From Anthoceros angustus (taxonomy: Eukaryota; Plantae; Anthocerotophyta), in assembly GCA_010909165.1 (NCBI GenBank), contig MU008192.1, positions 310,001 through 374,000 on the forward strand: 64,000 bases of DNA, given 5' to 3'. Both the position numbers and the translations under genes were made by a program. The notes under the pieces are model-generated. The model did not search any database. It was not told the DNA's origin and saw nothing but the letters and a program-made list of their open reading frames with translations. Of this stretch, positions 1-58,549 are shown one piece after another; the first letter of the stretch is position 1; each line of letters begins with the position of its first letter.

Positions 1-2161
1 AGTTGCCCAACAGTACGTCATCCAGCAGTCCTCTTTCAACGATCTGTGAGTGCAGCTGCCCTTCTGTAAGGCACCAGTGGCTCCACATGCCTTCAGAAGG
101 CAAGCAAAAGTAACATGGTTAGCCAAAATCAGGCCCTCCTGCTCCATTTGTCCATACAGAACAAGCGCCTCTTGGCCGAGTCCTTGCTGTGCATACCCAG
201 CAATCAGGGCATTCCATGTCACCACATCCTTTGGCCAAGCTGTCAAAACCTGGCGTGCATCTTCCAGTTCACCACATTTTGCATACATGTCCACCAGGCA
301 GTTGCCCACCACATTATCCAGCAGTCTTTCCACAATCTGTGAGTGCAGCTGCCTGCCCTTCTGTAAGGCACCAGTGCTTGCACAGGCCTTCAGAAGGCAA
401 GCAAAATGGTCAGCCAAAATGAGGCCTCCTCCATTTGTCCATACACAACAAGCGCCTCTTGGCGAGTCCTTGCTGCATACCCAGCAATCAGGGCATTCCA
501 TGTCACCACATCCTTTGTGGCCAAGCTGTCAAAACCTGGCGTGCATCTTCCAGTTCACCATTTTGCATACATATCCACCAGGCAGGTGCCCAACACTACA
601 TTATCCAGCAGTCCTCTTTCCACAATCAGTGAGTGCAGCTGCCTGCCCTTCTGTAAGGCACCAGTGCTTGCACAGGCCTTCAGAAGGCAAGCAAAAGTAA
701 CATGGTTAGCCAAAATCAGGCCCTCCTGCTCCATTTGTCCATACACAACAAGCGCCTCTTGGCCGAGTCCTTGCTGTGCATACCCAGCTATCAGGGCATT
801 CCATGTCACCACATTCTTTGTGCCATGCTGTCAAAACCTGGCGTGCATCTCAGTTCACCACATTTTGCATACCCAGATATCAGGGCATTCCATGTCACAT
901 CCTTTGGCCATGTCAAAAACCGTGCATCTTTCAATTTGCCACATTTTGCATACATGTCCACCAGGCAGTTCCCAACAAACAAGTTAGTGGAAATGCCACT
1001 GTGCAACACATCATAGTGCACTTTTCTGCCTGATTCCAAGTCGGCAGCTATTGCACAAGCTTGAAGGACAGCTACAAAGACGTGACCATCCGCCTTCACT
1101 CCTGATCGACGCATCTCATGGTACAGTTGGACAGCCTCAATAGGTTTCCCATGCTTAGCATATGCAGAGATTATGGAAGACCACATGAAGGCATTCGGTT
1201 TGCCGACCCTGGTGAGCACATCCCTAGCCTCTTGTAGCCTACCTCCACAGGCATACATGCGCAAGATATGGTTCCCCAAGTATGCATTCGAATCGTACCC
1301 AAGTTTGACAGTGAGATCATGAACTCTTCGCCCCACAACCAAATCCTTCTTAGCTGTGCACAGTTTGAGCACATTGTAAAACAGAGACTGAGAAATAGCA
1401 GAGTCTGTCTGCGCCAGAGATTCCAGGGCTCCAACGGCCTCAGAAAGCTTCCCTGCTGACATAACATGCTCACGGTTCCAGCCGTTACGACGCCCATTTC
1501 CGATCCTGCACCTGCAGGTTCAGGCTTATCCGGAGCTCGACTTGGAAGGAGGCACCATGACCCATCTGCATATCCAAGGAAACAGCTGCTCATCAACCCA
1601 AGCTGGCTTAACATGTTGTTTAACCACAGGACCTCGCCGGACCCTTACGCCGGAAGTCAGGCGAACGGGAGCTCTTCTTATCTCGTCTGTTGTCCACCAC
1701 ATGGTAGGGTCCAGAAAAATTGTTGCCACAAGTGCTCCTGCTCCTGCACGCCTGCAGGTTCAGGCTTATCCGGAGCTCGACTTGGAAGGAGAGGCACCAT
1801 GACCCATCTGCATATCCAAGGAAACGCTCATCAACCCAAGCTGGCTTAAAACGTTGTTTAACCACAGGACCTCGCCGGACCCTTACGCCGGAAGTCAGGC
1901 GAACGGGAGCTCTTCTTATCTCGTCTGTTGTCCACCACATGGTAGGGTCCAGAAAAATTGTTGCCACAAGTGCTCCTGCTCCTGGCGACGACCATCGCTG
2001 GAACTGTCCCCCCCATTTCTCGGAAGTGGAAGTGCTGGGTTCCTTACACTGTTGCACCTGGAGGATTGATTGTTTGCCCCGGATTGACTCCCAAGCTGGG
2101 GTGAGCGGCAGGTCCTCGTAGAACACCAATTTGTTGGGTCCACGACGGCTCCGATTGCCAT
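1..2161 (-). CDS. PLS-class PPR gene copy 1 (5' part; C-terminus runs off the window), with 2 N-terminal PDF-like motifs; frameshifted as assembled
   Basis: ORFs 806-1462 and 555-812 give PLS motifs (VTWNALIAGYAQQG, VTFACLLKACAS, CLVDMYAKCG). 1916-2161 gives the N-terminus MAIGAVVDP...EHLWQQFF. Colinear with copies 2-4. Confidence 0.85.
1505..1984. repeat. Near-identical ~238-bp tandem duplication encoding the PDF-like motif in PPR copy 1
   Basis: 1505-1745 and 1742-1984 are almost identical; TGTTGCCACAAGTGCTCCTG recurs at 1721 and 1959. Confidence 0.9.
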
Positions 2162-2532
2162 AGTGTGCCCATCTCCGGCGTCGGAAGATGACGAGTCTAA
2201 GAACAGACTGTGACGAGATGCCCCGATGCCAACATGCAGTACATGCCCGCACCTCCCGGAGGAGCTACAGACGGTTGTGGATTGGGTACCCAGAGAAACC
2301 TGTATGGTTCAATTTTGAAGTTGACAGAACCTGGTCAGTCTGAAGTTTTCCTACTTCCACTTTATATTCAGAAAAAATCTGATTCTCAGCGGAATGACGT
2401 GATGAGAAGTAGATCAGCGTTCCCCGTCCATGTCCATGTCGCAGTTTGGACAGGATCGATTGGTGGCTTCAGCTCCAGAACAAGCACATTCTCCCAGCAC
2501 AAACTTGACACTGGCTACTTATTTATTTATCC

Positions 2533-5500
2533 TCACGAACGACCTCTACAACTGCAACAGCCAGCTGCGAATCGATGCACACGGTACCCATCCCTCACAA
2601 CGATGTCCCGCTGTTCAAGCCTTGACATGATCTCCGTGGAAGTGTGACAGTCACTGCACATGCGTAGATTCTTCATTACCACCAGAGGGGCCCCACTCGG
2701 AGTGTTCAAGAGACCAAACGCAAGAGCCAGCTTCTCAGCATGCCCACAAAGCACATCTTCCTTCTCCTTCTCACACATCGGCTTCAACACCAACTTTGTG
2801 TGAGGCACGTGGCCGCCTTCCTCCTTCAGACGTGCATTCGTGCTCTCTACCTTCAGCGCAATATCCTCTCTCCTTTCTCCCACCAGAAATCTATGTACCT
2901 GCTTATTCACCTCAATGGTAGCCACTGCAGGCTTCTTATTAGCTCCCGCTCCCCTTCGCCGTGTTTCAATCCTGTCTACATCGGTCCACCTACCCGCATC
3001 GGCGTAGGCATTGGCCATGAGCACGTATGCAGGCGCCTCCTGGGGGTCCAGCTTAACAATGCTTTCAAAACACCACGACGCCCTCTCTATATCCCCGTGA
3101 CTTTTGCAGGCATTCAACAAAGACGTCAACCCCACAACATTACTTCGGGCCTCACATGACAATAGCATCTTCTCTGCCTCATCTAAATGGCCTGCACGAC
3201 CAAGAAGATCGATCATGCTAACGTAATGCTCAATAGTAGGTTTGATGCCATGCTGTTCAGCCATGGAATCGAAGTGCTTGCGGCCCTCCTGCACCAGCTC
3301 CTCATGGCTGCATGCTACTAGAAGGCAAGTAAAAGTAGCACCATCAGGCTGAATACCAGCAATTAACATCTCCTCAAAACAAGCTAGTGCCTTGTGACCT
3401 TCATCACAAGTGCCATACCCAGATATCAGGGCAGTCCATGTCACCACATCCTTTCTGTCCATGCAGTCGAAAACCTGGCGTGCATCTTCCAGTTCACCAT
3501 ATTTTGCATACATGTCCACCAGGCAGGTGCCCAACAGTACGTTATTCAGCAGTCCTCTTTCGACAATCTGTGAGTGCAGCTGCCTGCCCTTCTGTAAGGC
3601 ACCAGTGCTTGCACAGGCCTTCAGAAGGCAAGCAAAAGTAACATGGTCAGCCAAAATGGCCTGCTCCATTTGTCCATACAGAACAAGTGCCTCTTGGCCG
3701 AGTCCTTGCTGTGCATACCCAGATATCAGGGCATTCCATGTTACCACATTCTTTGTGGCCAAGCTATCAAACACCCTGCGTGCATATTCCAATTCACCAC
3801 ATTTCGCATACATGTCCACCAGGCAATTGCCCAACACTACATTGTCGAGCAGTCCTCTCTCGACAATCTGTGAGTGCAGCTGCCTGCCCTTCTGTAAGGC
3901 ACCAGTGCTTGCACAGGCCTTTAGAAGGCAAGCAAAAGTAACATCGTCAGCCAGAACGAGGCCCTCCTGCTCCATTTGTCCATACAACAAGCGCCTCACG
4001 AGACCTTGCTCAGCATACCCAGCTATCAGGGCATTCCATGTCACCACATCCTTTGTTCATGCTGTCAAAAACCTGGCGTGCATCTTCAGTTCACCACATT
4101 TTGCATACAGACATCAGCATTCCATGTCACCACATCCTTTGGCCATGCTATCAAAAACCTGGCGTGCATCTTCCAGTTGGCCACATTTCGCATACATGTC
4201 CACCAGGGAAGTGCCCACAAACAAATTAGTACGAATGCCGCTGTGCAACACATCACAGTGCACTTTTCTGCCAGATTCCAAGTCGGCAGCTAGTGCACAA
4301 GCTTGAAGGACAGCTACAAAGACGTGACCATCCGCCTTCACTCCTGATCGACGCATCTCATGGTACAGTTGGATGGCCTCATTCGGTTTCCTGTGCTTTG
4401 CATGTGCAGAGATTATGGAAGACCACATGAAGGCATCTGGTTTGCCGACCCTGGTAAGCACATCCTTGGCCTCCTTCAGACTACCTCCACATGCATACAT
4501 GCGCAAGATATGATTCCCCAAGTATGCATTCGAATCGTACCCAAGTTTGACAGCGAGATCATGAACTCTTCGCCCCATAACCAAATCCTTCTTAGCTGTG
4601 CACAGTTTGAGCACAGTGTAAAACAGAGACTCAGAAATATCAGAGTCTGTCTGCGCCAGAGATTCCAGGGCCTCTACGGCCTCACAAAGCTTCCCCTGCT
4701 GACATAACATGCTCACGGTTCCAGCCGTTACGACGCCCATTCCCGATCCTTCACGCCTGCCAGGTTCAGGCTTATCCGGAGAGCTCCACTTGGAAGGAGA
4801 GGCACCATGACCGATCTGCATATCCAACAAAACCAGCCGCTTATCAACCCAAGCTGGCTGAAACAGGCTGTTTAACCACAGGACCTCCCCGGACCCCTTA
4901 TGCCGGAAGTGAGGCGAATTCGTACCGCGTCTGTTGTCCCACCACATGGTAGGCTCCACAAACAATTGTTGCCACAAGTGCTCCTGCTGCTGTCGACTAC
5001 CATCGCTGGATAATTCGTCCCCACCCACACATTGTCTGGGAAGAGGAAGTGCTGGGCTCCTTAGACTGCTGTATATGGACCCTATTCGCCATCCTTCACG
5101 CCTGCCAGGTTCAGGCTTATCCGGAGAGCTCGACTTGGAAGGAGAAGCACCATGACCCAGCTGTATGTCCAAGGAAAGCAGCTGCTCATCAACCCAAGCT
5201 GGCTTGAACATGTTGTTTAACCACAGGACCTCGCCGGACCCCTTACGCCGGAAGTCAGGAGAACGGGAGCTCTTCGCTCCTCGTCTGTTGTCCCACCACA
5301 TGGTAGGCTCCAGAAAGAATTGTTGCCACAACTGCTCCTGCTCCTGGCGACGATCGTCGCTGGATAACTGGTCCCCACCTACACATTTTCTCGGAAGTGG
5401 AAGTGCTGGGCTCCTTACACTTCTGCACCTGGAGGCCTGATTGTTTGCCAGGGGATGAAGCCCTAAGGTGAGGTGAGCGGGAGCTCCTGGTAGAAACCCT

Positions 5501-5556
5501 GTACCCACACCAATTTGTTTGGTCCACAATGGTTCCGGTTGCCATACTGTGGCCAT
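2533..5556 (-). CDS. PPR copy 2: 2xPDF-PLS-E1-E2-DYW:KP protein ending GRS; putative U-to-C editing factor, frame break near 4050-4140
   Basis: ORF 4114-5556 has an S/R-rich leader, two WWDNR..P(D/H)F..KGSGEVLWL motifs, then PPRs. ORF 2533-4047 has PLS triplets, P2L2S2, E1E2, KKPAVATIEV, GHAEKLA, LRMCSDCH, HRF..GCCSCRGRS. Confidence 0.92.
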
Positions 5557-8500
5557 CGTTCAGGGACCACTCGGCTGTCGAAACAAGAGTCTAACAACAG
5601 ACTTGCCCACTTGTGGCAGGATGCCAGGAGGTGCTGTGTATAAAGAATGGTGCAGACCCTTTTTCGTGAAGCATCCCTCCCTCCCTCCTTGCCTTTCTTC
5701 ACTCAAACATATCATTCCTCAAAGATTCCCGGGTATCCAGTTGATAGTGGCTCCGTTCTCACTTACAATCATCTCCTTCTCTGGAATGGATCTCCAGTCC
5801 TCCCTTCCGTAAGGGGCTCGAGCTAAAGAGTAAAGTGGCCAGAAACGTAGCCACTACTGTGTCTGCATGGTTGGATATGCCCTTCACGCTCTTGCAGGAC
5901 CCCGTACGGTCTCCCTCCCACTGGCTACCGGCGTTATCCTGCACCTTCTAAGTTGTAGTGTCTAGAGCTTGGGACAGCAATCACACTCCACCTCTGAACA
6001 GTTCAGTCTCTCACCTTCATCAGGGTGGATTCACACCGAACGCATACGTCAGGAGCCCAACTGTCAAGAATGGTCGAGTTATCTCGTTCTCCCACCGACA
6101 GAACGGCGGCCATGGCGACCCTGCTCCCTTTTCTAGATCCAGCCTCTACTGCCCAACAACTTCCTAGGAGGTAGCTGCGAAGAGGTGGAGGGCCGGTTTC
6201 AGACCGGGAGCTCTGCGGCGCTGCTACTCCACGGATTGGTCGCCCAAGTTCTGCAGCGACGTAGGAAGGCAGATGGTGGCGCGGACTCTTTCGGCTCGAT
6301 ATGGGATAATCGGGAGTGACGATGAGGATATGGTGTGGGCAGGTGGTGGAGGCTGCGAATGTGCTGGGTCCGCATTTTGTGGCTGTGGACGGGATGGTTG
6401 GAGTGAACGTCAACCTAGTGCTCAAAGCCTATGCAAATGCGCGCGTAGTGCCTCATGTGAGGGTGCCGCTCTGGCTGCTTGGGGTCTGGATTTTGGATTC
6501 GCTGCGTTTCTTAACCAGCAGCTGTGTTGCAGCATTTTGCAGGCACCACAGGGTACGGGCACAGCGATGCGGGGGCCGCTGGAAGCCCTGGACAGGGCTT
6601 ATGCTGAGGTTGTGGGCGTAGAAGCTGCTCTAGTCCGTTCTAAGGTCAGTACTGCGGTGTGCCGTCTTTTCTGCTTCTCCTGAATCATGGAAGTAAGTGT
6701 ATCCGCTGATGGGTGGCTTTCTTCTTCGACTTTGCTGCTCTTCGACCTGACGGCGAGGTAGACATGTCTGCTCAGCGGTTTGCCTCTTGTTGGAACGGGC
6801 TTGCTTGCCGGATTAGATTGGATTGAGATTTTATGGTCTGTTCAGCTGCTGTCAGTTGCAGGTGCACCGTATGACTCTTTCGAGGAAGTGATCGGCTTGC
6901 GCGGCTCTCTAAGGCAAAGGTCGCTGAGAGAGTTTGGGGTTTCCTACAGAGAGATCCGGCCAGCCATCAGGTCCGCTCCCTGATGTTAGGAGACCGACCA
7001 TCAGCATTCAAGCATTTGAAACCAGAGCATGGAGAGAGCAAGGCAACCAGAATGGGAACGAGGGGACAGCTTTTACCACAGCAGTGGGCTCCAAGGTCTC
7101 TATCAACTCGCCATAGCATTTATAAAAACTTGAGTACATCTAGTTATCAACAACAACCACACACTTGGGATTCTGCGCCTGAACGAGAGGAAGTACATCC
7201 ACGTTTCATGGCTCACAAAACATGAACCTATTCGTATCCGATGATCAAATCAGGTGGTCAGATACGAGCAGCAAAGGACGACGATGGACAGAGCTCCATA
7301 TAAACCTGGCTGCAGTTTCGGGGACGGTACACAACTCGCCTCGACGATCTCGATGCATATGGCACGCTTGATCTCCGACACACTCAGCATCTGCCGCCAC
7401 GAATATCCACAGGATCGCTGAACCAAGGCACACTGCGTCTCAGACCTCACTCCAACAGAGAGGGCCTGCAGTTCAATCCAGTTCCCCGTCTGCAGCAGGC
7501 TACAGCAGCAGGAACTGTTGACACACACTTTGCCAGGCACAGCAGATAACAACAATGATGTGCAAACAGAGGCACTGCCTTATCAAGAATCCGGGGGCAC
7601 CTTTGCGCCTACAGGGGGCTACGTAGCAGGCAAGGCTGAGAAGGTTGCAGGAGCAGCCGCCCGCCTCTCAGACCCCGGCATAGCATGGACTCTGGCTCAA
7701 CTTCTGGAGAGGTGATGCGGCTCTTGTTCCAAGGCCCGTTCCTTGCTCCTCAGATGGTGGGAGAAGCTATCAAGGCGACCAACGTTTTCCCCTGAAACTA
7801 AAACACGGTACAGTAGTAGTATGTGTTCTTATAGATCGGACTGTTGCTCCCTCTCTTCCAGAGCTCCTTGGTAGTAGCAGAGGTGATGGCAGCTGAGACG
7901 AGGTACACCTGCCCCCATAGCGTCGTGATATCATCAGGTACCCCAATTGGGATGCTTCTGCAACTTTCTTCCATCCTTGACCAACTCTGCGTCAAGCTCC
8001 TACCCAGCTCCATCTCCACCTGCTGGGCAATCTGGCAGCGCCTGCTCGCCTTCTGCGCTGCAGTACAAAAGCGTTGTCCTGTCAGAAGCGGTGCCTACAT
8101 CCAACCAATGGCAGGGGCCACTGCAGGTGACGAGTCTGAGGTATGCTGCAGCTACACAGTGAGATATGCAGGCTGCAGAGAGCCATGGCTAACTCTGCTG
8201 CTGTTGCATGGTGAATCCAACCAGGTTTGATTTTTGCAGACGGCACATTTGTGGACGGCAGCACAAGTGAGCTGTCGTGCGACGGGCCCTTGAGGGAACC
8301 CTTTGTTGTCTTCTGGCAAGGTACGTTTTCGTGCCCTGCGTTGAAATGCAACCTGGCTTGCTACTGTCACGTTTGCTCCCGAAAAAGGCCTGAACAGTCA
8401 AATCCAATTCTTGCCTGCAGGGGGGCACTCACTGGACCCACTGGGCCTTGGCCTTGGACGATGTGCTGAGCTCGTTGCGGAAGCTTGAGGTTGGTTATGG

Positions 8501-9047: not shown

Positions 9048-12000
9048 TCACGGTCGACCCTTACAACTGCAACAACCATTTGCGAATCGATGCACCCGAT
9101 ACCCGTCCCTTACAACAATGTCTCTGTGTTCAAGTCTTGACATGATCTCCGTGGAACTGTGGCAGTCACTGCACATGCGTAGATTCTTCGTTACCACCAG
9201 AGGCGTCCCACTCGGAGTGTTCAGAAGACCAAACGCCAGAGCCAGTTTCTCAGCATGCCCACAAAGCACATCTTCTTTTTCCTTCTCAGACAGGGGCTTC
9301 AACACCAATTTTGTGTGAGGTACGTGGCCTCCTTCTTGCTTCAGACGTGCATTCGTGCTCTCTACCTTCAGCGCAACACCCTCTTCTCTTTCTCCCACCA
9401 AAAATCGATGCACCTGCTTATCCACCTCAATGGTCGCCACTGCAGGTTTCTTGTTAGCTCCTGCTACCCTTCTCTGTGTTTCAATCCTGTCTACATCTGT
9501 CCACCTCCCAGCATCTGCATAGGCATTCGCCATGAGCACATATGCAGACGCCCTTTCAGGGTCCTGTTTAACAATGCTTTCAAAACACCACATCGCCCTC
9601 TCTATATCCCCATGACTTTTGCAGGCATTCAGCAAACACCTCAAGCCCACTACATTACTTTGGCCCTCACATGACAACAGCATCTTCTCAGCCTCATCTA
9701 AATGGCCTGCACGCCCAAGAAGATCAATCATGCATTGTAATGCTCAATAGTAGGTTTGATGCCATGCTGTTCAGCCATGGAATCAAAGTGCGGACCCTCC
9801 TGGACCAGTCCCTCATGACTGCATGCTACTAAAAGGCAAGTAAAAGTAGCATCATTAGGCTGAACCCAACTAACATCTCCTCAAAACAAGCTAGTGCCTT
9901 GTGACCTTCATCACAAGTACCATACCCAGATATGAGGGCCGTCCATGTCACTACATCCTTTGTGGCCATGCTGTCAAAAACCTGGCGTGCAGCGTCCAGT
10001 TCACCACATTTTGCATACATGTCCACCAAGCAGGTGCCCAACACCACGTAATCCAGCAGTCCTCTTTCCACAACCTGTGAGTGCAGCTGCCTGCCCCTCT
10101 GCAAGGCACCAGAGCTTCCACAGGCCTTCAGCAGGCAAGCAAAAGTAACATCATCAGCCAGATTGAGGCCCGCCTCCTCCATTTGTCCGTACACAGCAAG
10201 CGCCTCTTTGTCAAGTCCTTGCTGTACATACCCAGCAATCAGGGCATTCCATGTCACCACATCCTTTGCCATGCTGTCAAAAACCTGGCGTGCATCTTCC
10301 AGTTCACCACATTTTGCATACATGTCCACCAGGCAGTTGCCCACACTACGTTATCCAGCAGTCCTCTCAATCTGTGAGTGCAGCTGCCTGCCCTTCTGTA
10401 AGGCACCAGTGCTTGCACAGGCCTTCAGAAGGCAAGCAAAAGTAACATGGTCAGCCAAAATGAGGCCCGCCTCCTCCATTTGTCCATACAAGCGCCTCTT
10501 GCCAAGTCCTTGCTGTCATACCCAGCTATCAGGGCATTCCATGTCACCACATCCTTTGTTCATGCTCTCAAAAACCTGGCGTGCATCTTTCAGTTCACCA
10601 CATTTTGCATACCCAGATATCAGAGCATTCCATGTCAACACATCCTTCGTGGCCATGCTGTCAAAGACCTGCCGTGCATCTTTCAGTTCGCCACATTTTG
10701 CATACATGTCCACCAGGGAGTTGCCAACGAACAAGTTAGAAGGAATGCCACTATGCAACACATCACAGTGAACTTTTCTTCCAGAGCGGCAAAAGCACAA
10801 GCCTGAAGGGCAGCTACAAAAACGTGACCATTCGCCTTCATTCCTGCCCTTCGCATCGCAGTCGTATGGCCTCATTAGGTTTCCCGTGCTTAGCATGTAG
10901 AGAGATTATCGAAAACCACAGGAAGACATTTGGTTTGCCTACCCTGGTGAACACATCCATGGCCTCCTGCAGACTACCTCCAGATGCATACATGCGCAAG
11001 ATATGATTCCCCAAGTACGAATTTGTTTGGTACCCAAGTTTGACAGTGAGATCATGAACTCGTCGCCCCACCACCAAGTCCTTGTGAGCTGTACACAGTT
11101 TGAGCACAGTGTAGAACAGAGTCTGAGAAATACCAGAGTCTGTCTGCGCCAGGGATTCCAACGGCCTCAGAAAGCTTCCCCTGCTGACATAACCTGCGCA
11201 CGATTCCAGCCGTCACGACGCCCATTGCCGGTCCTGCACGCCTGCCAGGCTCGGGCTTATCCGGAGAGCTGGACCCGGAAGGAGAGGCAGCAAGACCCAT
11301 CTGGATATCCAAGGAAAGCAGCTGCTCATCTACCCAAGCTGGCTTGAACAGGTTGTTTAACCACAGGACCTCTCCGGATCCCTTACGCCGGAAGTCGGGC
11401 GACCGGGAGCTCTTGGCATCCCCTCGGTTGTCCCACCACATGGTAGGATCCAGAAAAAATTGTTGCCACAAGTGCTCCTGCTCTTGCTCCTGGCGACGAT
11501 CATCGCTGCATAAGTCGTCCCCAGCCACACATTTTCTGGGAAGTTGAAGAGCTGGGCTCTTCACCCTGCTGCACTTGGAGCCTATTCCCGATCCTGTACG
11601 CCTGCCAGGTTGAGGCTCATCCGGAGAGCTGGACTCGGAAGGAGAAGGACAGGCACCATGACCCATGTGCATATCCAAGGAAAGCAGCTGCTCATCTACC
11701 CAAGCCGGCTTGAGCATGTTGTTTAACCAGAGGACCTCGCCGGACCCCTTACGCCGGAAGTGAGGCGGACGGGAGCTCTTTGTATCTGTTGTGTTGTCCC
11801 ACCACATGGTCGGGTCCAGGAAGAATTGTTGCCACAAGTGCTGCTGCTGCTGCTGCTGCTGCTGCTCCTGCTGCTCCTGCCAACGGGCTGGGCGGGAAAA
11901 TCCGTCCGCAGCCGCACATTTTGTCGGAAGTGGGAGTGCTGGGCTCCTTACACTGCTGCACCTAGAGGCTTGGTTGTTTGCCAGGAATTGACTCCCTGAG

Positions 12001-12119
12001 GTGACGTGAGGTGAGCGGGAGCTCCTCGTAAGATCCCTGTACACACACCGTTTGATCGGGTCCACAACAAGTCCGGTTGCGATACCGTGTCCATCGCTCA
12101 AGGACCGCTGTGGTACCAT
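9048..12119 (-). CDS. PPR copy 3: 2xPDF-PLS-E1-E2-DYW:KP protein ending GRP; several frameshifts as assembled, start uncertain
   Basis: ORFs 11052-12314 (two PDF-like motifs, polyQ), 10838-11161, 10516-10896, 9829-10344 and 9048-9731 (KKPAVATIEV, HAEKLA, CSDCH, SCKGRP). Confidence 0.9.
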
Positions 12120-13416: not shown

Positions 13417-16004
13417 ATGGCCACTGTATGGCAGCCGGACCCGTTGTGGACCCAACAAACTGCAATCGGTGTGTGTATGGGGATCATACGGGGAGCTCCC
13501 TCTCACGTCATCTTAGGGAGTGAACCTCTGGCAAACAAAGCCTCCAGGTGCAGCAGTGTATGGAGCCCGGCGATTCCACTTCCGAGAAAATGTGTGGGTG
13601 GGGACGGGTTTTCCAGCGATGGTCGTCCCCAGGAGCAGGAGCACTTGTGGCATCAATTTTTCCTGGACCCTACCATGTGGTGGGACAACAGACGAGATAA
13701 AGACCAGCTCTCGTTCGCCTGACTTCCGGCGTAAGGGGTCCGGTGCTGTGGTTAAACAACATGTTAAGCCAGCTTGGGTTGATGAGCAGCTCTGTTTCCT
13801 TGGATATGCAGATGGGTCATGGTGCCTCTCCTTCCAGTCCAGCTCTCCGGATAAGCCTGAACCTGGCGTGCAGGATCGGAAATGGGCGTCGTAACGGCTG
13901 GAACCGTGAGCATGTTATGTCAGCAGGGAAGCTTGAGGCCGTTGGAGCCCTGGAATCTCTGGCAGACAGACTCTGCTTTCTCAGTCTCTGTTTACACTGT
14001 GCTGAAACTGTGTACAGCTAAGAAGGATTTGGTTGTGGGGCGACGAGTTCATGATCTCACTGTCAAACTTGGGTATGAGTCGAATGCATGGGGAACCATA
14101 TCTTGCGCATGTATGCATGTGGAGGCTAGAGGAGGCCATGGATGTGTTCACCAGGGTGGGCAAACCAGATGCCTTCATGTGGTTTCCATAATCTCGCATA
14201 CGCTAAGCATGGGAAACCTAATGAGGCCATACAACTGTACCATGAGATGCGTAGGTCAGGAGTGAAGGCGAATGGTCACGTCTTTGTAGCTGCCTTCAAG
14301 CTTGTGCATTGCCGACTTGGAATCTGGCAGAAAAGTGCACTGTGATGTGTTGCACAGTGGCATTCCTCCTAACTTGTTTGTTGGCAACTGCCTGGTGGAC
14401 ATGTATGCAAAATGTGGCGAACTGAAGATGCACGCCAGGTTTTGACAGCATGAGAAAGGATGTGGTGACATGGAACTGATATCTGGGTATGCAAAATGTG
14501 GTGAACTGAAGATGCACGCCAGGTTTTGACAGCATACAAAGGATGTGGTGACATGGACGGCCTGATTGCTGGGTATGCACAGCAAGGGCTGAGGCGCTTG
14601 TGTATGGACAAATGGAGCAGGAGTGATTTTGGCTAACCATGTTACTTTGCTTGCCTTCTGAAGGCCTGTGCAAGCACTGGTGCCTTACAGAAGGGCAGGC
14701 AGCTGCACTCACAGATTGGAAAGAGGACTGCTGGATAACGTGTGGCAACTGCCTGGTGGACATGTATGCAAAATGTGGTGAACTGGAAGATGCACGCCAG
14801 GTTTTGACAGCTTGCCACAAAGGATGTGGTGACATGGACCGCCCTGATTGCTGGGTATGCAGCAAGGACTCGCCAAGAGGCGCTTGTTGTATGGACAAAT
14901 GGAGGAGGCGGGCCTCTTGGCTGACCATGTTACTTTGCTTGCCTTCTGTGCAAGCACTGGTGCCTTACAGAAGGGCAGGCAGCAGCTGCACTCACAGATT
15001 GTCGAAAGAGGACTGCTGGATAACGTGGGCACCCTGGTGGACATGTATGCAAAATGTGGTGAACTGGAAGATGCACGCCAGGTTTTGACAGCATGAACAC
15101 AAAGGATGTGGTGACATGGACCGCCCTGATATCTGGGTATGGTACTTGTGATGAAGGTCAGAAGGCACTAGCTTGTTTTGAGGAGATGTTAGTTGCCGGT
15201 ATTCAGCCTAATGATGCTACTTTTACTTGCCTTTAGTAGCATGCAGTCATGAGGGACTGGTCCACGAGGGTCGCACTTTGATTCCATGGCTGAACAGCAT
15301 GGCATCAAACCTACTATGAGCATTACACCTGCATGATTGATCTTCTTGGGCAGGCCATTTAGATGAGGCAGAGAAGATGCTATTATCATGTGAGGGCCAA
15401 AGTAATGTTGTGGCTTGACGTCTTTGTTGAATGCCTGCAAAAGTCACGGGGATATAGAGAGGGCGATGTGGTGTTTTGAAAGCATTGTTAGGCTGGACCC
15501 CAGGAGGCCCTGCCTATGTGCTCATGGCCAATGCCTATGCAGATGCAGGTAGGTGGACCGATGTAGACAGGATTGAAACACAGAGAGGGTAGCAGGAGCT
15601 AACAAGAAACCTGCAGTGGCGACCATTGAGGTGAGAAGCAGGTACATACATTTGTGGGAGAAAGGAGAGAGGATATTTGCTCAAGGTGGAGAGAGCACGA
15701 ATGCACGTCTGAAGCAGGAAGGAGGCCACGTACCTCACACAAGTTGGTGTTGAAGCCACTGTGTGAGAAGGAAAAGGAAGATGCGCTTTGTGGGCATGCG
15801 GAGAAACTAGCTCTGGCGTTTGGTCTTTTGAATACTCCGAGTGGAACACCTCTGGTGGTGACGAAGAATCTCCGCATGTGCAGTGACTGCCACAGTTCCA
15901 CGGAGATCATGTCAAGGCTTGAACAGAGAGACATTGTTGTAAGGGATGGGTACCGTCTGCATCGATTTGCAGCTGGTTGTTGCAGTTGTAAGGGTCGACC
16001 ATGA
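13417..16004 (+). CDS. PPR copy 4: 1xPDF-PLS-E1-E2-DYW:KP protein ending GRP; heavily frameshifted as assembled
   Basis: 13417-13722 HLWHQFFLDPTMWWDNRR; 13520-13894 SPDFRRKGSG..KPAWVDEQL; PLS fragments; 15654-16004 HAEKLA, CSDCH, SCKGRP. Confidence 0.88.
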
Positions 16005-18500: not shown

Positions 18501-19070
18501 CATTAACCACATATTGCATATCTTGTTCTTGACATTAGGTCCGTTGACATGACTGAACTGCTTAATCAACTAATCTCGCGGTAGTCTGACCATAGGCTTT
18601 TTAACTATAATTCCTTCCTAACCCGAGACTCAATGCAGGAGCACCCTAACGCTATGTTTGATTGCAATTCGGTCTCAACTTCCAGCCCCCCTAGCCACAT
18701 ATCGAGTGGCAATCAACACTCTGTCCATCGAGCTCAGACATACGGCTCATCCAATCATGGCTAGCTACAAGCTACTATGACATAAGATTTGCACAATGAT
18801 CAAGCTCGGATTTTGGTACTTCACTGACAAAAAAAGCTATCGAGTTTTTTGGGGCAAGTTTATTGAACGACAAGGTTTTGGCTTCAAAGCCCCATACTCT
18901 TTAAGTTAAAAACATATAGCATTTTGTTTTTTATTTTGATATCTCAAATATGCCCAATTTATAATAACATTGGGCCTATTCACGTGACTTTCTCGTTCTC
19001 GACCCTCATGTGCCCATTTTTTGGGCATATGAGGCTCCCTCATGTGAGTTGTCGGTCTAAAACCACCCAC

Positions 19071-19466
19071 TTTGAATTGATTTGAGTTGAGTTGAGTTGA
19101 GTTGAGTTGAGTTGAGTTGAGTTGAGTTGAGTTGAGTTGAGTTGAGTTGAGTTGAGTTGAGTTGAGTTGAGTTGAGTTGAGTTGAGTTGAGTTGAGTTGA
19201 GTTGAGTTGAGGTTGAGTTGAGTTGAGTTGAGTTGAGTTGAGTTGAGTTGAGTTGAGTTGAGTTGAGTTGAGTTGAGTTAGGTTGAGAGTTGAGTTGAGT
19301 TGAGTTGAGTTGAGTTGAGTTGAGTTGAGTTGAGTTGAGTTGAGTTGAGTTAGGTTGGAGTTGAGTTGAGTTGAGTTGAGTTGAGTTGAGTTGAGTTGAG
19401 TTGAGTTGAGTTGAGTTGAGTTGAGTTGAGTTGAGTTGAGTTGAGTTGAGTTGAGTTGAGTTGAGG
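19071..19466. repeat. (GAGTT)n pentanucleotide microsatellite, about 390 bp
   Basis: Directly visible, with a few interruptions (GAGGTT, TAGGTT). Confidence 0.98.
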
Positions 19467-31351: not shown

Positions 31352-34300
31352 TACTCCCTTCTCATTTGTTGGCCTCGCCAACTCATGTGTAATATTTCTT
31401 GACTCTCCAACCGCTGACCTTGGTAGGGGTCGCCTCTAATCTTGGGGTATGGAGCCATTTGCGAAAACTTCAAGGACTTTATATGGCCCCATCCATCGAA
31501 GGTGAAGCTTACGGAAAGTGCATATCTGTCATATGGTAGGTCCAAGTCACGAGGTACCACCCACAACCTTTCTTCCGTCCGGTCCCTCCGATATAAGCCG
31601 CCTCGGACAAATGGACTCGAATAATGCCGAGGCATCTTGTTGCCTTGAAAGGTCCGAGGATGCTGCCCGATTCTGTGAACTCAAATATTTACGAATAAGT
31701 AGGCCTGGTGTATCCGGATCTCCCCTTCTCATTTACTGCCGTACCACCATCACTTGCCGTCTTCCGATTCTGCCAGGCCGCTTCCCCCTCCATCTCTGCC
31801 GCGAACAACGCTTCATCGGGAACAGCAACTTCCACATCCGTCCCACCACCTTCCACAACTGTCGTTCCACCTTCCACTACCGCAGTAGTACCTTCCACAC
31901 CAGTGCAGTCAACTGTCACTCCATAACAACCCACCAGGCTGATGGAGTGGGGAATGTCTCTTCGATAGTCCCGCTCTTCATCCGACCAAGAAATGTGGGC
32001 AAACGGGAACTTCTCTTTCTCATCCTCCTCCCCAAATGTGTCTTCTACAGAGGTATAGCCATCTCTTCCGTGGCCTGCATTTATCTCGACTCCAAGATAA
32101 ACATATCCTCCCTTCCTTAACCTTGGGGTCCCACCGAGGTTTGAAGCCCACTTCCTTCCTTGCCCACTTGAAGGTACAGCGCGCCCCATACATCCACGTC
32201 CGCCAATCAAAACGTCATATCCAGGAGCTTTCTGTTTGATGACCACATAGTCCATAAGGTACGGAATGGTACCAATATGGGTTAGAACTCCAGTCAGCTC
32301 CCCCACCGGTGTCATCCTGGACATGTCCGCAAGACGCAGCACCTTGGATGTGTGTTCTATCTCCAGCCCCAACTTCCGAGCTGTGTCCTCCGTCATGATG
32401 TTGACCCCAGACCCAGAATCCAGAGGTACTTTCTTGATAACGCATCCCGAGATTTCTATCTGCAGCTCCGCGGGACCTTGGTCAGCCATGGCCACCATGT
32501 TCACGGCAAGGGGCCTCGGCCTTGTTTTGGGAAGGGTCCGCCTCTTCTTGGGTTGTGCTGCCTTCAATGCCCACCGGATCTGCTGGCGGTACCTCGGATT
32601 GTCCCTGAGAAGCTGTCCAAATGTTATCATGAATTTTTGGTCCATGATGGCCTCCGCCAGATTGAAAGGGCCATTCAGTGTTCTCCCTCTCGCCTCCCCC
32701 GTTTCAACAACCCGTAGCTCCCAGTGTCGCGGAAGCAGGATGGCCGAGGCGGGTGACCAGAGTGAGGTGTGTGGTCGGTCTCGGTTCCTCTCGGATCATC
32801 TCCATGACTTTCTCGACATCCGGCGGAAACGCCTAACTCATCCTTTTTCTCCTTTCGCCGATCTCGATTCCCCCCCTCCGGCTCCTTTCGCACGTCATCC
32901 CGTCCCTGTTGAAGGAGTCATAGTCGTGACGCCCCAAAATCGCGTGTGGTGCGCCGCCATGTGCATTTGCGCCTCCTCCAGCCTGCAGCCCCTCCTCGCC
33001 TCATCGTTGGTATTTCCTCCCTTCCTTCGCCCGATGAAGACGACTTCCTCCTCACCTCCGATGTTATGGAGGCTCCAATCTTCCTTCTTCTTCTTCCCGT
33101 CCCCTTAGGGTGTCCGCCTTCCTCATCCCGCTGTTCGAATGGCGGCGGTGGAGTCTTCATAGTACCTATCCATGTCCTCCAATCCCTCCAAACTTCTCAA
33201 CATGTTGGCCTCGGAATCCTCCCACACCGCCATGAACGCGTCTTCGACGTGCATCACTGGTAACGGATTTTGCTCCATGGGTGGGTGGGTTGCCGTAACC
33301 GGGGGTTGAGCAATCCTCACATGTTTTTTCGGCATCTGACAGAGGACACTGCCAGCCACGTGCCCCGATTGCTTGCAATCCACACACAGCCTCTCAAAAT
33401 CACCATTCCTGGCGAGATGCGAGGGCAGCTGCAAGATGCCCGAATCCCTCAGAAATCGAATGGCACTCATTTGCCCGGGTTCCTTGCCATCGATTGCGAA
33501 CACCCATGTTTGGGGAGTTTCGTAAACTTGAGGGTACAAAGTCTTGGTACCAAATTGGTGTCGCCTCTTGAATTTGGTATGTATCTTCCAAGCACATCTC
33601 CTCCTCCTCTTCCTCGTAGCCGGTTGCGTTTTGTGGACGTTCGACTGAGTGCCCTCGCCTGCTGCGAGAAGAGATTAGCGCTCCGTAGCACCCTTCTCGT
33701 GGTCTTTTATGGCATTGAGATGAAGTTTCTCCAGTTTGGCCATCATTTCCTCCATCTTGTTCCCTTGTTGCTCCACCTTTTTGGCTGTTGATTCCACCTC
33801 TCTTCTCACCTGCTCCGCGTCCTTCTTTGCATATACCGGCTCCTTTCCTCTGGCGCGGCGTCTTCGTTCCCACTCATTTTTCGTTTCCTTCTTTCTCTCC
33901 CTTCGGCCGCGCTCATCTCCTGACGAATCTTCCTCTGAGCTATCACTGGTCTCTTCTTCCGTGGAACTCTCCGAGGAGCCTGCTGAAGAGTTATCTCCCT
34001 CCATGGAACTTTCATCGGAGGATGAGGAGTACTTTTTCTTCTTCTTGGATTTCTTCTTGTCTCCGCGCCTTCTTGATTTCTTCTTCCGCATTGGACTCCT
34101 CGTAGTTCGGCCTTGATCGCCCGATCCAAGTCTTTTCTCACTTGAGACGACGTGCTTCCCATCTCCGCCCAGACCTCTCGCGAACCAGATTGCCATTCGG
34201 ACCAGGATCCGTAGGTGGAACCTTTCCACATAAGCTGCGGTCTCCTTCTTCCTCTCCGCAATCCCTCGAGTTTGGACAAGACATATCCTTCCACATCAAC

Positions 34301-34935
34301 TCCTAACCTTTCACAAAAGCTCTTCAAGGCCCCAAAGGTAGGGGTGTGGAAGAAGCTACTCTCGCTTGTACCACTTGGCCGCTCCGAAGACTCCATAAAC
34401 AGGGCACGTTGCGCATCCTCCTCTGGCAAGCGCCACCGCTCAAAACGCCGACAAACTCGTCGGGATCCTCATGGCCCTTCTTTCTCCATACAACGGGTAA
34501 GATTGCTTAGTGGTAACACCGAGTATCGCCATAGCTACCGTGGTAGTACTTTCAACGATCGCGGTAGTTGACGATACCACGCCCGACCGACCTCTACATT
34601 CACGAAGTTTGAGGAGCACGATCTGGCAACTGGAGCGAGATCAAAGACAAGGTGGATCGGGTACCGGCCCTTGTACCGCTTCCGTAGTCGAGAGTTGGGA
34701 ATGAATGCTAAGATCCGATCCCGATTCCAGACTCCCTCTTCCTCGTCCGGTGTGATCCTGCTCCTCCTCGTAACTCTCGCAATCCTTTCCGCTGCTTGGC
34801 GTTGTGCCGAGCGTTTCCCCAGTCGATCCAGTCGCTTGTCTCCACCCGAGGCATCCATCTATCATCTAGTAATGCTAGACTCTACTTAGGCTATGGTTAG
34901 TTCCTCGTCCTTGATTTCATTCCCGCAGGCCAAAA

Positions 34936-51607: not shown

Positions 51608-54600
51608 ATGGGTTGTATCAATGGGAAGCCTTCTGCAGACGAAACTGGGCCGGGGTTCTGCTCCAATTTGGGCAGAGGAGGGTTTGGGCAGAAGCAGAGG
51701 AATGTGGGGAATGGAGCTGGGGCTGCGAGGAAGGAAGAGAAAGGGTTGAAGGTCCAGGGTTCGCGTGATGCTGCTTTGGGTGGTGAGAAGTTTGAATTGG
51801 GCGGTGGAAACCCGGACCTGGACTACCACCTCGGCCAGGGTGCCGCCCAGCTGGAGCCCTCGGACCTGGATCTGGGGCTGCCCCGTCTTTCACGACTGTC
51901 GGCACAGTACCTGCCTCCTACTGGATCCAGGGTAGTGCATGTGCCGTCGGGGAATTTCGAGCTGCGGTATTCGTATCTCTCGCAGCGGGGATACTACCCT
52001 GAGGCTCTGGACAAGGCCAATCAAGATAGCTTCTGTGTGCACACTCAGTTTGGGCAAGACCAGAATGACCACTTCTTCGGCGTGTTTGATGGGCATGGGG
52101 AATTTGGGACTCAGTGCTCGCAGTTTGCAAAGAAGCACCTGTGTGAGAATCTGCTCAGGAATAGGCACTTTCATACGGATGCGGTTCAAGCCTACCACAT
52201 GGCGTTTACTGCCACCAACACCCAGCTGCACCGGAATAGCATAGATGATTCAATGAGTGGTACGACAGGCGTGACTGTGCTGGTGAGGGGGAGCATGCTG
52301 TATGTCGCGAATGTAGGTGACTCCAGGGCTGTCCTAGCAGAGAAGAGGGGGAAAAAGCTGGTTGCGGTAGATCTGTCCAGTGATCAGACTCCATTTCGGC
52401 CGGACGAGTGCGCCAGAGTGAAGTCAGCTGGAGCTAGGGTTCTCACCTTGGATCAGTTGGAGGGCCTCAAGAATCCCAATGTACAGTGCTGGGGTGGGGA
52501 AGAGGATGATGATGGGGACCCTCCCCGCTTGTGGGTGCAGAATGGGATGTATCCTGGAACAGCTTTCACCAGAAGCATTGGTGATACGGTTGCGGAACGT
52601 ATTGGTGTTATTGCTGTGCCTGAAGTGCTGGTCATGGAGCTCACTTCGAAGCACCCGTTTCTGGTGGTTGCCAGTGATGGAGTGTTTGAATTTCTTTCAA
52701 GTCAAGCTGTTGTGGACATGGTGAGCGTGTGGCACTTGCCTGTGTCTGTCTTGGTGGTGTCTTCTGGCTTTCAATATTGAAATGCTTGTGCTGTCGAGAT
52801 TGCAATGTGCAATGTGCACATTGAATGTCTCCAGGATAGAAGTGCTGCTATGCACTGAGATTCTGGAGGCATCACTAGTGTGAAGTATGATGCCTATCTG
52901 TTCAGCTTCCAATTTGTGTCTTGCAGGTTGCAAAGTTTAAGGATCCTCGGGATGCTTGTGCGGCAATTGTAGCTGAGTCCTATCGCCTGTGGCTTCAATA
53001 CGAAACCCGTACCGATGACATTACCATTATCATTGTACATATCGATGGTCTTCAGGATGTAAGTGCAGGGAGGTGCAGAGGTTGAGAGCTAATGTGCAGT
53101 AAATTAGCATCTTTATTTTTTAAGCTTTCATAACCCCCTGGGCAACGTCTGGTAGGGGTTTTCTGAACTCTTGGGCATTTCATGCAGGCGGAAGGACCCC
53201 TGGGTATCAAAGACAGTGACATATTTTCGCTTACTGAGAAAATACAAGGTGGTAGCTCTCCTGGGTTGACCTTTGGAGGAAGGAAGTCGTCAGGGGTCCG
53301 CCCTGCTAGGCATGATCTGTCAAGAGCACGTCTGAGGGCAATTGAGACTTCCTTAGAGGCTGAAGAAGTTTGGTTGCCTCCAGCTAAAATACATGAGAAG
53401 ACTGCTGAAGAAAGGGTATGTCTTGATGCATCTTTGTCATTTTTCGTTTGTCTTCAGTACTTAGCTGCAACATTTTGAGGACGGTCTTCAAGATACGCTT
53501 CTTGCGATCTCTTTGTGTGGGTGACCATACCCGGCGTATGCGGAATCTGATGGCAACAGGCGCAAATTGAGAAGGCTCTGCAATCAAATTTTCTATTCCA
53601 CAACCTGACTGAGAAGCAGCTGGATACTCTTTATGGTTGTATGGAGCGAGTGCATGTGAATGCAGGGGATGTTATTATACGTCAGGTAAGTAATCTGGCA
53701 GCTACAACTTATGCCAGCCATGTGAACATTGATTGAATTGTTGGCTTGACTTTGTGTCATTGTCTTGTTTTTCATCTGTGATCATTGGAAACGTTGGCTT
53801 GTCTGTATAGGGTGCTGAAGGCGATCAATTTTACATTGCTGAAAGTGGTCGATTTGAAGCTCTGGTCTCCCAGGTTCTTGCTACAAATTTGTCTGGATCA
53901 TGTCTCCATTTCCTGTCATTCAAGGCTGCATGTGCTGAACTGGTTTTTGTTTGCAGTCGTCAACTGGAGACCAAGACATGGGCACTGTAGTTGCACAGTA
54001 CAGAGGAGAAGACAGCGCGTGTTTTGGCGAGCTTGCCTTAATGTATGATGCCGATAAAGAGTGTGAACTGTGTGTCCTAGACTGCTGTCAGGCTTTAACT
54101 TGCAGTGGGTATCTGGCAGGTACAATAAGCCTCGGCAAGCCTCTGTTCGAGCTGTTACCAATGGCACACTTTGGGCACTTTCTCGAGAAACATTTCGCAG
54201 TGTTCTCCTAACAAAGTTTACTCACCAGTCTGCACTGAAGATCATGAGGACACTAGATGTGCTCTCAAAGTTCAGTCTACATCAGCTGCATCGTCTTGCT
54301 GACTGCCTGGTGGAATTCAAGTTTCAGGATGGTGATGTCATCGTAGAGAAGGTACTGGCTATGTTGACAGCAAAGTGGTCGGACAAGAGTCATTGTGGAA
54401 AAGAAAAGTGGTCATACTGTCTAGTCCTAAGCATTCAAGCACCATGATGAAACTTGTGATATTGGGCTCTCAAAATTACTAGGAGAGGTGCTGTCAAGTT
54501 GTCTTTCCCTTGAAACAAAGAGCTGATGGTTTCTCGGCAACTGCAGGATGAAGAGGTCTCAACATTTTACATTGTGAACCGAGGAGATGTACAGGTAACA

Positions 54601-57523: not shown

Positions 57524-58549
57524 TCAACAGACTTTGGCTTTGGAGAAGTCCATCTCAGGGTGCTGGGCCATGAACTTCTTTAAGATGTCGTTCTTCTGCT
57601 GCTCATCAGCTGTCGGCAGTCCCATAGCCTTCTGGCGTTGATCATACATCATTTTCTCCACAGTTTGGCGTGTCTCAGGGTCCAAATCTGCCAGCTTACT
57701 GTTCTCTGGTTCCACTTTCTGGGTGTTGATTTCGACATCACCCTTAATCACAGACTTCCACCACTCCATTTGATTGTGCTTGGTGAGTAGAACAGACACA
57801 ATCTTCCCATCCTCCAAACTCCAGAAACAGTCATCCGGTTTCACACGATTGAACAACTCACCCTCGACAATAGGAGCTTCCCCTTTGATGCCCACCTTGA
57901 TATGTGTCTTTTTTATGTCACACAGCACAGCTCGAGACCTGGTTCCTGGTGGCACAGGAACCTGCACCGACACCTCCGACAGTGTTTGAGTCCAAGAATA
58001 TTTATCCAAGTCGGCACCGTTCCCAGCATTAGGTTTGACCCCATCCTTCCCGTCATCCTTCTCCGGCTCATCCGGCAACTCTACAGAGCTGCTAGAGGTG
58101 ACAGTGCTGTCCTCCATAGTGGTATCTTCCGAAGCCTTCCCCTTCTCCTCATGCCCGTTGCCATTTGCAGCCTCCTCCTTTACCGCAGGCTTCTCCTGCT
58201 TCACCGACTTGCTGAAGCTCTGCGGAACTAACTTAATCGGACCGGTCCTCGTCTTGCTAGACGAAGCCCTGGCAGCGTCATAGTCCGCCTTGCCCTCCAC
58301 TCTCTGCCGCTTCACGGCCGTAACAATTTCTGCAACGCGGGCTTCAGCTCCGGCCTCCAAGAACAGGTCCGTCTTCCTCCTAAGAAAATCAAACACAGTT
58401 CGTAGAAGCTCAAAAGGTTGCTCCTCGTGCTCCTTCAACAGAGCTCCCAGAGCCTCATCCAGAGGGAAGCTGGGAGGAGTGGCACCGCTAGACCCTGCCA
58501 CCGGCTTCGCCTCCGGAGTTTCCTCGGTGTAGTCCGAAATAACCGCCAT
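57524..58549 (-). CDS. BOB1: BOBBER1 / NudC-family chaperone, intronless, 341 aa
   Basis: MAVISDY; [18 protein letters not shown]; [43 protein letters not shown]; HPEMDFS. Confidence 0.95.

What the first reader, a model, noticed from the sequence alone, without database searches (positions are those of the whole stretch)
4834..5331. OSB/PTAC9-type PDF ssDNA-binding motifs fused N-terminally to DYW:KP RNA-editing PPR proteins
Seen: between the leader and the PPR array of copy 2 are two ~50-aa motifs, LWQQFFLEPTMWWDNRRGAKSSRSPDFRRKGSGEVLWLNNMFKPAWVDEQL (5179-5331) and a second at 4834-4977, in one unbroken frame with the first PPR repeats. The motif also occurs in copy 1 (~1590-1969, x2), copy 3 (~11320-11837, x2) and copy 4 (~13645-13795, x1). 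Established: this pattern (W..FF..P..WWDNR..K...PDF..K..GE.LWL...P.W) is the PDF motif of plant organellar ssDNA-binding OSB/PTAC9 proteins, normally C-terminal to an SSB-like fold, and PLS editing factors usually have only a transit peptide before the PPRs. Inference: a PDF-PLS-E-DYW:KP chimera could tether editors to nucleoids or transcription bubbles, act as a built-in ssRNA chaperone in a lineage without MORF proteins, or reach ssDNA. I know of no description of it, but could not search the literature.
Basis: partly seen in the sequence, partly recalled or inferred. Interest (0 to 1): 0.93.

Follow-up and report, generated by a model that had tools for sequence, protein, structure and literature searches.

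The report
OSB-derived PDF domains on PPR editors

Summary
Confirmed. ORF 4114-5556(-) holds two PDF domains in frame with a PLS-PPR array. The gene ends in a GRP-type DYW:KP domain with its catalytic residues intact. The motif matches OSB proteins (E 6e-13), folds on its own (pLDDT about 90) between disordered linkers, and is under purifying selection (pN/pS 0.30 vs 0.88 for leader and linkers). Intact PDF-PPR fusions occur in Sphagnum, Selaginella, Diphasiastrum and ferns, mostly without any DYW, so the fusion is not U-to-C-specific.

Added here: (1) an intron inside the PDF is at the same position in OSB genes and in moss and lycophyte PDF-PPR genes, so the domain came from a nuclear OSB gene; (2) the PDF is related to a zinc-ribbon/Zn-less tail on phage ERF/Rad52 annealing proteins; (3) the frame breaks here look like assembly errors (0 nonsense codons in 1,617); (4) both copy-2 PDFs deviate at near-invariant residues.

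Best reading: an accessory, sequence-independent single-strand grip (0.55). No paper found. The scan reported this fusion at least eight times elsewhere in this genome.

The parts
4114..5556 (-). Copy 2, N-terminal ORF (480 aa): leader, PDF, linker, PDF, linker, first PLS repeats
5332..5556 (-). Copy 2 leader, a putative organellar transit peptide (1 acidic vs 6 basic residues in the first 60 aa; disordered; near-neutral evolution). Its second half belongs to the duplicated unit
   Evidence: targeting is inferred
5179..5331 (-). Copy 2 PDF domain 1 (PDF tripeptide kept; the near-invariant Lys three residues after WDNR is Ala, with Lys one further on)
4978..5178 (-). Disordered linker 1 (67 aa)
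4834..4977 (-). Copy 2 PDF domain 2 (3-aa deletion that removes the conserved Lys; PDF reads PHF)
4732..4833 (-). Disordered linker 2 (34 aa)
2938..4731 (-). Copy 2 PLS-P2L2S2-E1E2 PPR array, with canonical code pairs (ND, NN, TD, SD) in P and S motifs
3983..4140 (-). Zone of short deletions that break the copy 2 frame; probable long-read consensus errors
2533..2937 (-). Copy 2 DYW:KP domain (KP box, HAE, Lys88, Met92, CxxC; ends GRS)
1..2172 (-). Copy 1: leader, two PDFs (1821-1970, 1583-1732, nearly identical to each other), PPR array running off the window start; many short deletions
9048..12094 (-). Copy 3: two PDFs (11685-11837, 11319-11471), PLS-E array, DYW:KP 9051-9452 ending GRP; frameshifted
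13417..16004 (+). Copy 4 (inverted): one PDF (13645-13792), PLS-E array, DYW:KP 15604-16001 ending GRP; many short deletions

Best explanation
These are intronless, expanded hornwort GRP-type PLS-E-DYW:KP editing-factor genes. They inherited an old N-terminal accessory domain: a PDF domain copied at DNA level from a nuclear OSB gene onto a PLS-PPR gene. After import and loss of the leader, the PPR array reads its RNA target and the DYW:KP domain edits it. The PDF, on a flexible tether at the 5'-facing end of the array, acts as a sequence-independent grip on single-stranded nucleic acid. It holds the editor near nucleoid ssDNA or R-loops and nascent transcripts, and/or holds the RNA flank open, which raises local concentration and dwell time. 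It does not take part in catalysis. One, two or three PDFs arise by repeated local duplication of a unit of about 350 nt. SHOWN: architecture, homology, OSB-gene origin, independent folding, purifying selection, distribution. INFERRED: organelle targeting, nucleic-acid binding by these PDFs, which ligand (ssDNA or ssRNA), any effect on editing.
For: OSB match E 6e-13. The profile's top 150 hits are 81 OSB-type and 11 PDF-PPR proteins. The phase-0 intron inside the PDF is shared by Marchantia and Ziziphus OSB genes and by Selaginella, Diphasiastrum and Sphagnum PDF-PPR genes. Stand-alone fold with pLDDT 89; disordered linkers and pTM 0.48 for the whole ORF. pN/pS 0.30 vs 0.88, Fisher p 0.007. 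The PDF alone is reported sufficient for ssDNA binding in OSB1 (PMC6963530, citing Zaegel 2006). The related phage module sits on ssDNA-annealing proteins of different folds, ERF and Rad52. Designer GRP editors, built from PLS and C-terminal consensus motifs only, work at 22-26% (PMC9478123), so the domain is accessory.
Against: No binding or localisation data exist for any PPR-attached PDF. The measured high affinity (Kd about 10 nM) is for tetrameric OSB2 (PMC6451138); one or two tethered copies may bind weakly. Both copy-2 PDFs lack the 96%-conserved Lys, and one has Asp-to-His in the PDF tripeptide. PPR arrays run N-to-C along RNA 5'-to-3' (established knowledge), so the PDF points away from the polymerase, which fits a transcription-bubble tether poorly. 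Transcription of copy 2 was not shown.
Confidence: 0.55

Rival explanations
1. The PDF is a protein-interaction module. It recruits a partner, such as a trans-acting DYW donor, an SSB/OSB coat or a nucleoid scaffold, rather than binding nucleic acid itself.
For: Most full-length fusions outside hornworts lack a DYW and would need one in trans (trans donors are proposed for ferns in PMC12548569). The phage relative is a C-terminal tail of annealing proteins; such tails bind partner proteins in lambda Red-beta (my knowledge). Several invariant Trp residues could form a docking surface.
Against: The only reported activity of a PDF is ssDNA binding (PMC6963530, PMC6451138), and OSB2 does not bind PolIB (PMC6451138). 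The hornwort GRP proteins carry their own DYW yet keep the PDF.
Confidence: 0.2
2. In this hornwort GRP clade the PDF is a decaying passenger, and the second copy is a by-product of unequal crossing-over.
For: Near-invariant residues are changed in copies 2 and 3 and in P0104. PDF1 vs PDF2 of copy 2 has dN/dS 0.52. The units do not sort into 'first' and 'second' clades, and copy 1's two PDF cores are nearly identical.
Against: Pooled PDF pN/pS of 0.30 equals that of the PPR repeats, against 0.88 for flanking sequence. Core Trp, Pro and Phe residues are all kept, and both units fold. PDF segments occur in very many paralogous contigs in all four runs.
Confidence: 0.12
3. The PDF serves the U-to-C reaction specifically, for example by handling or releasing the protein-RNA crosslink product.
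For: All four copies here and intact P0104 pair PDF with DYW:KP. Designer KP proteins crosslink to RNA through Lys88, and no natural KP protein has been shown active (PMC11845758).
Against: The fusion occurs in Selaginella, which has no DYW:KP (PMC12548569), in Sphagnum, and on PLS-E proteins without DYW. The domain sits at the far end from the active site.
Confidence: 0.08
4. The PDF directs the deaminase-fold domain to ssDNA, so the protein edits organellar DNA.
For: An ssDNA-binding domain and a deaminase fold sit in one protein.
Against: The PPR code residues are canonical RNA-reading pairs. Most fusions have no DYW. DYW activity has been shown only on RNA (PMC9478123).
Confidence: 0.03
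5. On gene status: the four copies are true pseudogenes rather than intact genes with assembly errors.
For: Every copy is frame-broken. Some deletions are shared between copies 1 and 4 and between copy 1's two PDF units. No contig in four runs spans copy 2.
Against: There are 0 nonsense codons in 1,617 aligned codons, and pN/pS is 0.13-0.30 in the domains, where about 25-50 stops would be expected at usual indel-to-substitution ratios (ratio from my knowledge). Indels are about 1 per 3 substitutions in copies 1 and 4, mostly 1-2 nt deletions, with about 60% of those in base runs. Single-copy genes in the window have long intact ORFs. Public contigs of paralogues carry extra bases at the copy 2 break points.
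Confidence: 0.25

Closest known systems
Plant OSB proteins (OSB1-4; OSB2 = pTAC9)
   Same: PDF domain by sequence, by predicted fold (TM 0.91 to an SSB-PDF cluster) and by a shared intron in the moss and lycophyte fusion genes; 1 to several tandem copies; organellar leader.
   Different: No OB/SSB fold in the protein or found in the window. The PDF is N-terminal rather than C-terminal, and is followed by PPR-DYW.
Hornwort PLS-E-DYW:KP editing factors, GRP subgroup (designer KP2/KP3)
   Same: PLS triplets, P2-L2-S2-E1-E2, KP box, HAE, Lys88, Met92, 133-aa domain, GRP/GRS end (PMC9478123, PMC11845758).
   Different: Descriptions and designer proteins cover only the PPR array and C-terminal domains. 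The N-terminal PDF is not mentioned in the passages I retrieved.
PPR fusions with RRM, MORF or RanBP2-Znf domains (PMC13386178)
   Same: An accessory nucleic-acid- or editosome-related domain fused to a PPR protein.
   Different: Those are rare fusions with known editing cofactors. The PDF comes from DNA maintenance, has no Pfam model, and that paper contains neither 'PDF' nor 'OSB'.
C-terminal zinc-ribbon / Zn-less module of phage ERF and Rad52/Sak single-strand annealing proteins
   Same: The WDNR-x8-PD[FY]K core with identical spacing in 71 of 105 viral hits; Lys at +3 in 38 of 41 distinct motifs and a downstream Trp in 27 of 41, neither part of the search pattern; fold TM 0.77 and 0.70 to phage proteins.
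   Different: Most phage versions have CxxC...C..C zinc ligands where plants have a helix and a Trp core. They lie at the C-terminus of DNA recombination proteins. Function of the phage module is untested.

Membership tests
PDF domain (OSB type) | Significant sequence match to OSB PDF motifs | tested here: met
   E 6.4e-13 to Salvia OSB2; OSB-type proteins are 81 of the top 150 profile hits
PDF domain (OSB type) | Conserved W/P/WDNR/K/PDF/LW/PW residues | tested here: inconclusive
   Core kept, but the copy 2 PDFs lack Lys24 and PDF2 reads PHF with a 3-aa deletion; copies 1 and 4 keep Lys24
PDF domain (OSB type) | Same fold as the PDF of SSB-PDF proteins | tested here: met
   AF2 pLDDT 89; TM 0.91 over 61 aa to a Streptophyta SSB cluster, both sides predicted
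PDF domain (OSB type) | Binds ssDNA | not testable with these tools
   Reported for OSB1/OSB2 only (PMC6963530, PMC6451138)
OSB protein family | OB/SSB-like fold N-terminal to C-terminal PDF domains | tested here: not met
   No SSB Pfam hit and no OB-fold match in the window. These are not OSB proteins.
PLS-class PPR | P-L-S triplets followed by P2-L2-S2-E1-E2 | tested here: met
DYW:KP, GRP subgroup | KP box, HAE, Lys88, CxxC, C-terminal GRP | tested here: met
   All present; copy 2 ends GRS, copies 3 and 4 end GRP
DYW:KP, GRP subgroup | U-to-C editing activity on a target site | not testable with these tools
   Shown only for designer KP2/KP3/KP6 (PMC9478123)
DYW:KP, GRP subgroup | One open frame from leader to DYW, expressed | tested here: inconclusive
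   Broken as assembled in all copies; an intact relative exists (P0104/L001); runs gave no spanning contig
MORF/RIP cofactors | MORF box (S8 propeptide/I9-like fold) | tested here: not met
   No Pfam hit for the PDF and no solved-structure match above Z 2.7
Phage SSAP C-terminal zinc ribbon | Four Cys zinc ligands around WDNR/PDFK | tested here: not met
   Window motifs have no Cys; they resemble the Zn-less phage versions in L057, L062, L065, L067 (47-50 bits to the PDF profile)

The most novel reading that the evidence does not exclude
Seedless land plants (hornworts, mosses, lycophytes, ferns) use an undescribed, widespread class of PPR editing factors with a built-in single-strand-binding domain. 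The domain was recruited from organellar DNA-maintenance genes and is related to a phage recombination module. It couples editing to nucleoids or nascent RNA, and is the missing natural part that would make DYW:KP editors efficient or turn over; adding it would improve synthetic U-to-C editors.
Probability: 0.25. Interest if true: 0.85.

Novelty: new variant of a known kind. Interest (0 to 1): 0.6.

Why it matters
PPR editing factors are taken to have only a transit peptide before the repeats, and the PDF domain is described as the private ssDNA-binding part of OSB proteins. The domain has no Pfam model, and OSB surveys require an OB fold (PMC13393729), so the fusion is easily missed. It gives a direct test of whether organellar editing is coupled to the nucleoid. 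It may explain why designer GRP editors are inefficient and why natural DYW:KP proteins are still uncharacterised: constructs may omit a native domain. The shared intron and the phage relatives also give the PDF domain an evolutionary history.

Tried and rejected
Pfam and PHROGs have no model for the PDF. No solved structure matches by sequence or fold. tblastn of plant PDFs against annotated phages gave nothing meaningful, and the search for related loci could not use the alignment; the phage link came from the Atlas fold search and a DNA pattern scan. A pattern for the Zn-less plant-like form found a single 536-bp MAG contig among GTDB genomes, not examined further, so no bacterial donor was identified. 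The profile-profile match of phage and plant motifs (98.6%) is partly circular, because the phage set was selected by the motif; I rely on spacing and on positions outside the pattern. Six viral hits (the L021 group) are 5'-3' exonucleases with a chance-like match, and were set aside. The PDF tree (60 columns) cannot resolve one versus several fusion events: AU p 0.535 neither rejects nor shows one clade. Read-through from an adjacent OSB gene was rejected. Reads: only contigs were available; RNA status is a guess and paralogues fragment them, so transcription of copy 2 is neither shown nor excluded. RNA targets were not predicted (no organelle genome or editome at hand). Zaegel 2006 and Gerke 2020 are not held, and Gutmann 2020 was not read, so a passing mention there cannot be excluded.

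Full report
Observation. The ORF at 4114-5556 on the minus strand (480 aa) reads: leader, motif 1 (5179-5331), a 67-aa linker, motif 2 (4834-4977), a 34-aa linker, then PPR repeats, with no stop. Downstream, after short deletions at about 3983-4140, a second ORF (2533-4047) carries further PPRs, E motifs and a DYW domain (Pfam E 2e-32). Three more copies lie in the first 16 kb: copy 1 with two motifs, copy 3 with two, and inverted copy 4 with one. The DYW has the KP box, HAE, Lys88, Met92 and a GRS/GRP end. GRP is a hornwort subgroup (PMC9478123), so the genome is probably a hornwort; this is inferred, as run names are coded.

Identity of the motif. Residues 60-260 retrieve OSB2/OSB3 and SSB-PDF proteins (best E 6.4e-13). 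A profile of the four intact window motifs finds 580 proteins among 1.84 billion; of the top 150, 81 carry an SSB domain and 11 carry PPR arrays. AlphaFold2 on a 144-row alignment gives a confident 61-aa domain (pLDDT 89) with no solved relative. In the ESM Atlas its best shape matches are three plant PPR clusters (127, 57 and 63 members, two named DYW), a plant SSB cluster (TM 0.91) and two phage clusters (TM 0.77, 0.70). In the 480-aa model both PDFs and the PPR array fold, the leader and linkers are disordered, and pTM is 0.48: beads on a string. No OB fold was found in the window, so these are not OSB genes.

Distribution. Intact PDF-PPR proteins occur in Adiantum, Ceratopteris, Pteridium (transcript assemblies), Selaginella, Diphasiastrum and four Sphagnum species. 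One intact single-exon PDF-PLS-E-DYW:KP(GRP) gene, P0104, sits on a Logan contig. Eleven full-length fusions end without a DYW, and Selaginella encodes no DYW:KP at all (PMC12548569). The fusion therefore extends well beyond U-to-C editors. None of the named fusions is from a seed plant, where MORF proteins are exclusive (PMC13386178), but my sample is only the top hits.

Origin. OSB genes of Marchantia and Ziziphus (both PDFs) have a phase-0 GT-AG intron five codons before the PDF tripeptide. The PDF-PPR genes of Selaginella, Diphasiastrum and Sphagnum have an intron at exactly this place. The domain was therefore copied from a nuclear OSB gene at DNA level. The copies here and the Adiantum gene (2,406 bp for 801 aa) have no intron, which fits expansion by retroposition as reported for PPR genes of early land plants (PMC13386178). 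The tree cannot tell one fusion from several. Further back, a DNA pattern for WDNR...PD[FY]K found 105 viral loci, 71 with exactly the plant spacing and 32 with one other in-frame spacing. Most are zinc ribbons at the C-terminus of ERF (58) or Rad52-like (2) single-strand annealing proteins or of phrog_11717 proteins (13). A few lack zinc ligands, look like plant PDFs (47-50 bits) and lie near nuclease, helicase and primase genes. Positions outside the pattern agree too (Lys at +3 in 38 of 41, downstream Trp in 27 of 41). The direction of transfer is not shown.

Selection and gene status. Comparing copies codon by codon, PDF pN/pS is 0.30, like the PPR repeats (0.24-0.30; DYW 0.13), against 0.88 for leader and linkers (Fisher p 0.007; the pairs share copy 2, so they are not fully independent). 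The tandem PDFs come from duplication of a unit of about 350 nt; the units do not group by position, so duplication or homogenisation was repeated. Both copy-2 PDFs deviate at near-invariant sites, so the doubling should not be read as simple doubling of affinity. All copies are frame-broken. However, the roughly 160 indels are mostly 1-2 nt deletions, often in base runs, at about one per three substitutions in copies 1 and 4. No nonsense codon occurs in 1,617 aligned codons (codons beside gaps excluded), where true decay would give some 25-50. Paralogous public contigs carry extra bases at the copy 2 breaks. I read most breaks as consensus errors in repeats (about 75%). This differs in emphasis from several earlier scan notes, which call the copies broken genes. 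Expression of copy 2 could not be shown: contigs are short and paralogous.

Mechanism. The PPR code residues are canonical, so RNA reading and editing should work as in other DYW:KP proteins. Designer GRP proteins without a PDF edit at 22-26%, and MORF does not help them (PMC9478123), so the PDF is accessory. Its only reported activity is ssDNA binding (PMC6963530, PMC6451138), and its phage relatives ride on ssDNA-annealing proteins. I favour a sequence-independent single-strand grip on a flexible tether (0.55), with the ligand open between nucleoid ssDNA and the RNA 5' flank. Rivals are a protein-docking module (0.2), a decaying passenger in this clade (0.12), a U-to-C-specific helper (0.08) and DNA editing (0.03).

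Novelty. Nine working full-text searches found no paper joining PDF/OSB with PPR editing factors (notably). The 2026 OSB survey has no occurrence of PPR or phage, and the 2026 editing-factor survey has no occurrence of PDF or OSB. Three key subscription papers could not be read. The scan itself noted the fusion at least eight times on other pieces of this genome; those notes were leads, not evidence. A word search of them for the phage link returned nothing. Verdict: a real, apparently undescribed domain architecture built from two known parts, a new variant of a known kind, interest 0.6.

Noticed in passing
L003-L107 (IMG/VR loci), e.g. L003:12671-13483, L082:514-1281: A CxxC-x3-WDNR-x8-PD[FY]KC-x4-C zinc-ribbon module is the C-terminal tail of ERF-like (58), Rad52-like (2) and phrog_11717-type (13) phage proteins; it looks like the prokaryotic relative of the plant PDF domain.
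   Followed up: yes
L057:1795-2520, L062:10254-11003, L065:5074-5628, L067:551-1099: Phage proteins with a Zn-less, plant-like PDF and an unannotated N-terminal domain, near PD-(D/E)XK nuclease, WhiB, DnaB-like helicase and primase genes. They may be an undescribed recombination/SSB family; the Atlas feature search pointed weakly to Phage_gp49 (PF25690).
   Followed up: partly
P0020, P0024, P0189-P0193 (also P0015, P0017, P0027): Poly-PDF proteins with 7-11 tandem copies and no SSB domain detected, in dinoflagellates (Cladocopium, Effrenium voratum) and unlabelled assemblies. The domain is not plant-only.
   Followed up: no
P0016 (L002), P0168 (Pteridium aquilinum transcript): A conserved 1,370-aa protein with three PDFs before a long PLS-E array, 65% identical over the PDF region between two samples; one is a fern transcript.
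   Followed up: partly
window 1583-1970: Copy 1's two PDF cores are almost identical and share the same 1-2 nt deletions: a very recent duplication, context-dependent sequencing error, or a mis-assembly.
   Followed up: partly
window 5542-5900 and beyond: Run X1 (RNA guessed) holds a 1,117-nt contig identical to the window here, ending at the copy 2 start. It may be a 5' region or a neighbouring transcript.
   Followed up: no
window about 19070-19450: A long GAGTT pentanucleotide microsatellite.
   Followed up: no
window 31500-34500: Fragmented ORFs that look like LTR-retrotransposon gag/protease remnants, judged by eye; no Pfam hit for 31692-32645.
   Followed up: no
window 51608-52780, 57524-58549, 60080-62343: Single-copy genes with long intact ORFs (PP2C, NudC/CS-domain protein, polyphenol oxidase), used as a control for assembly quality.
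   Followed up: partly
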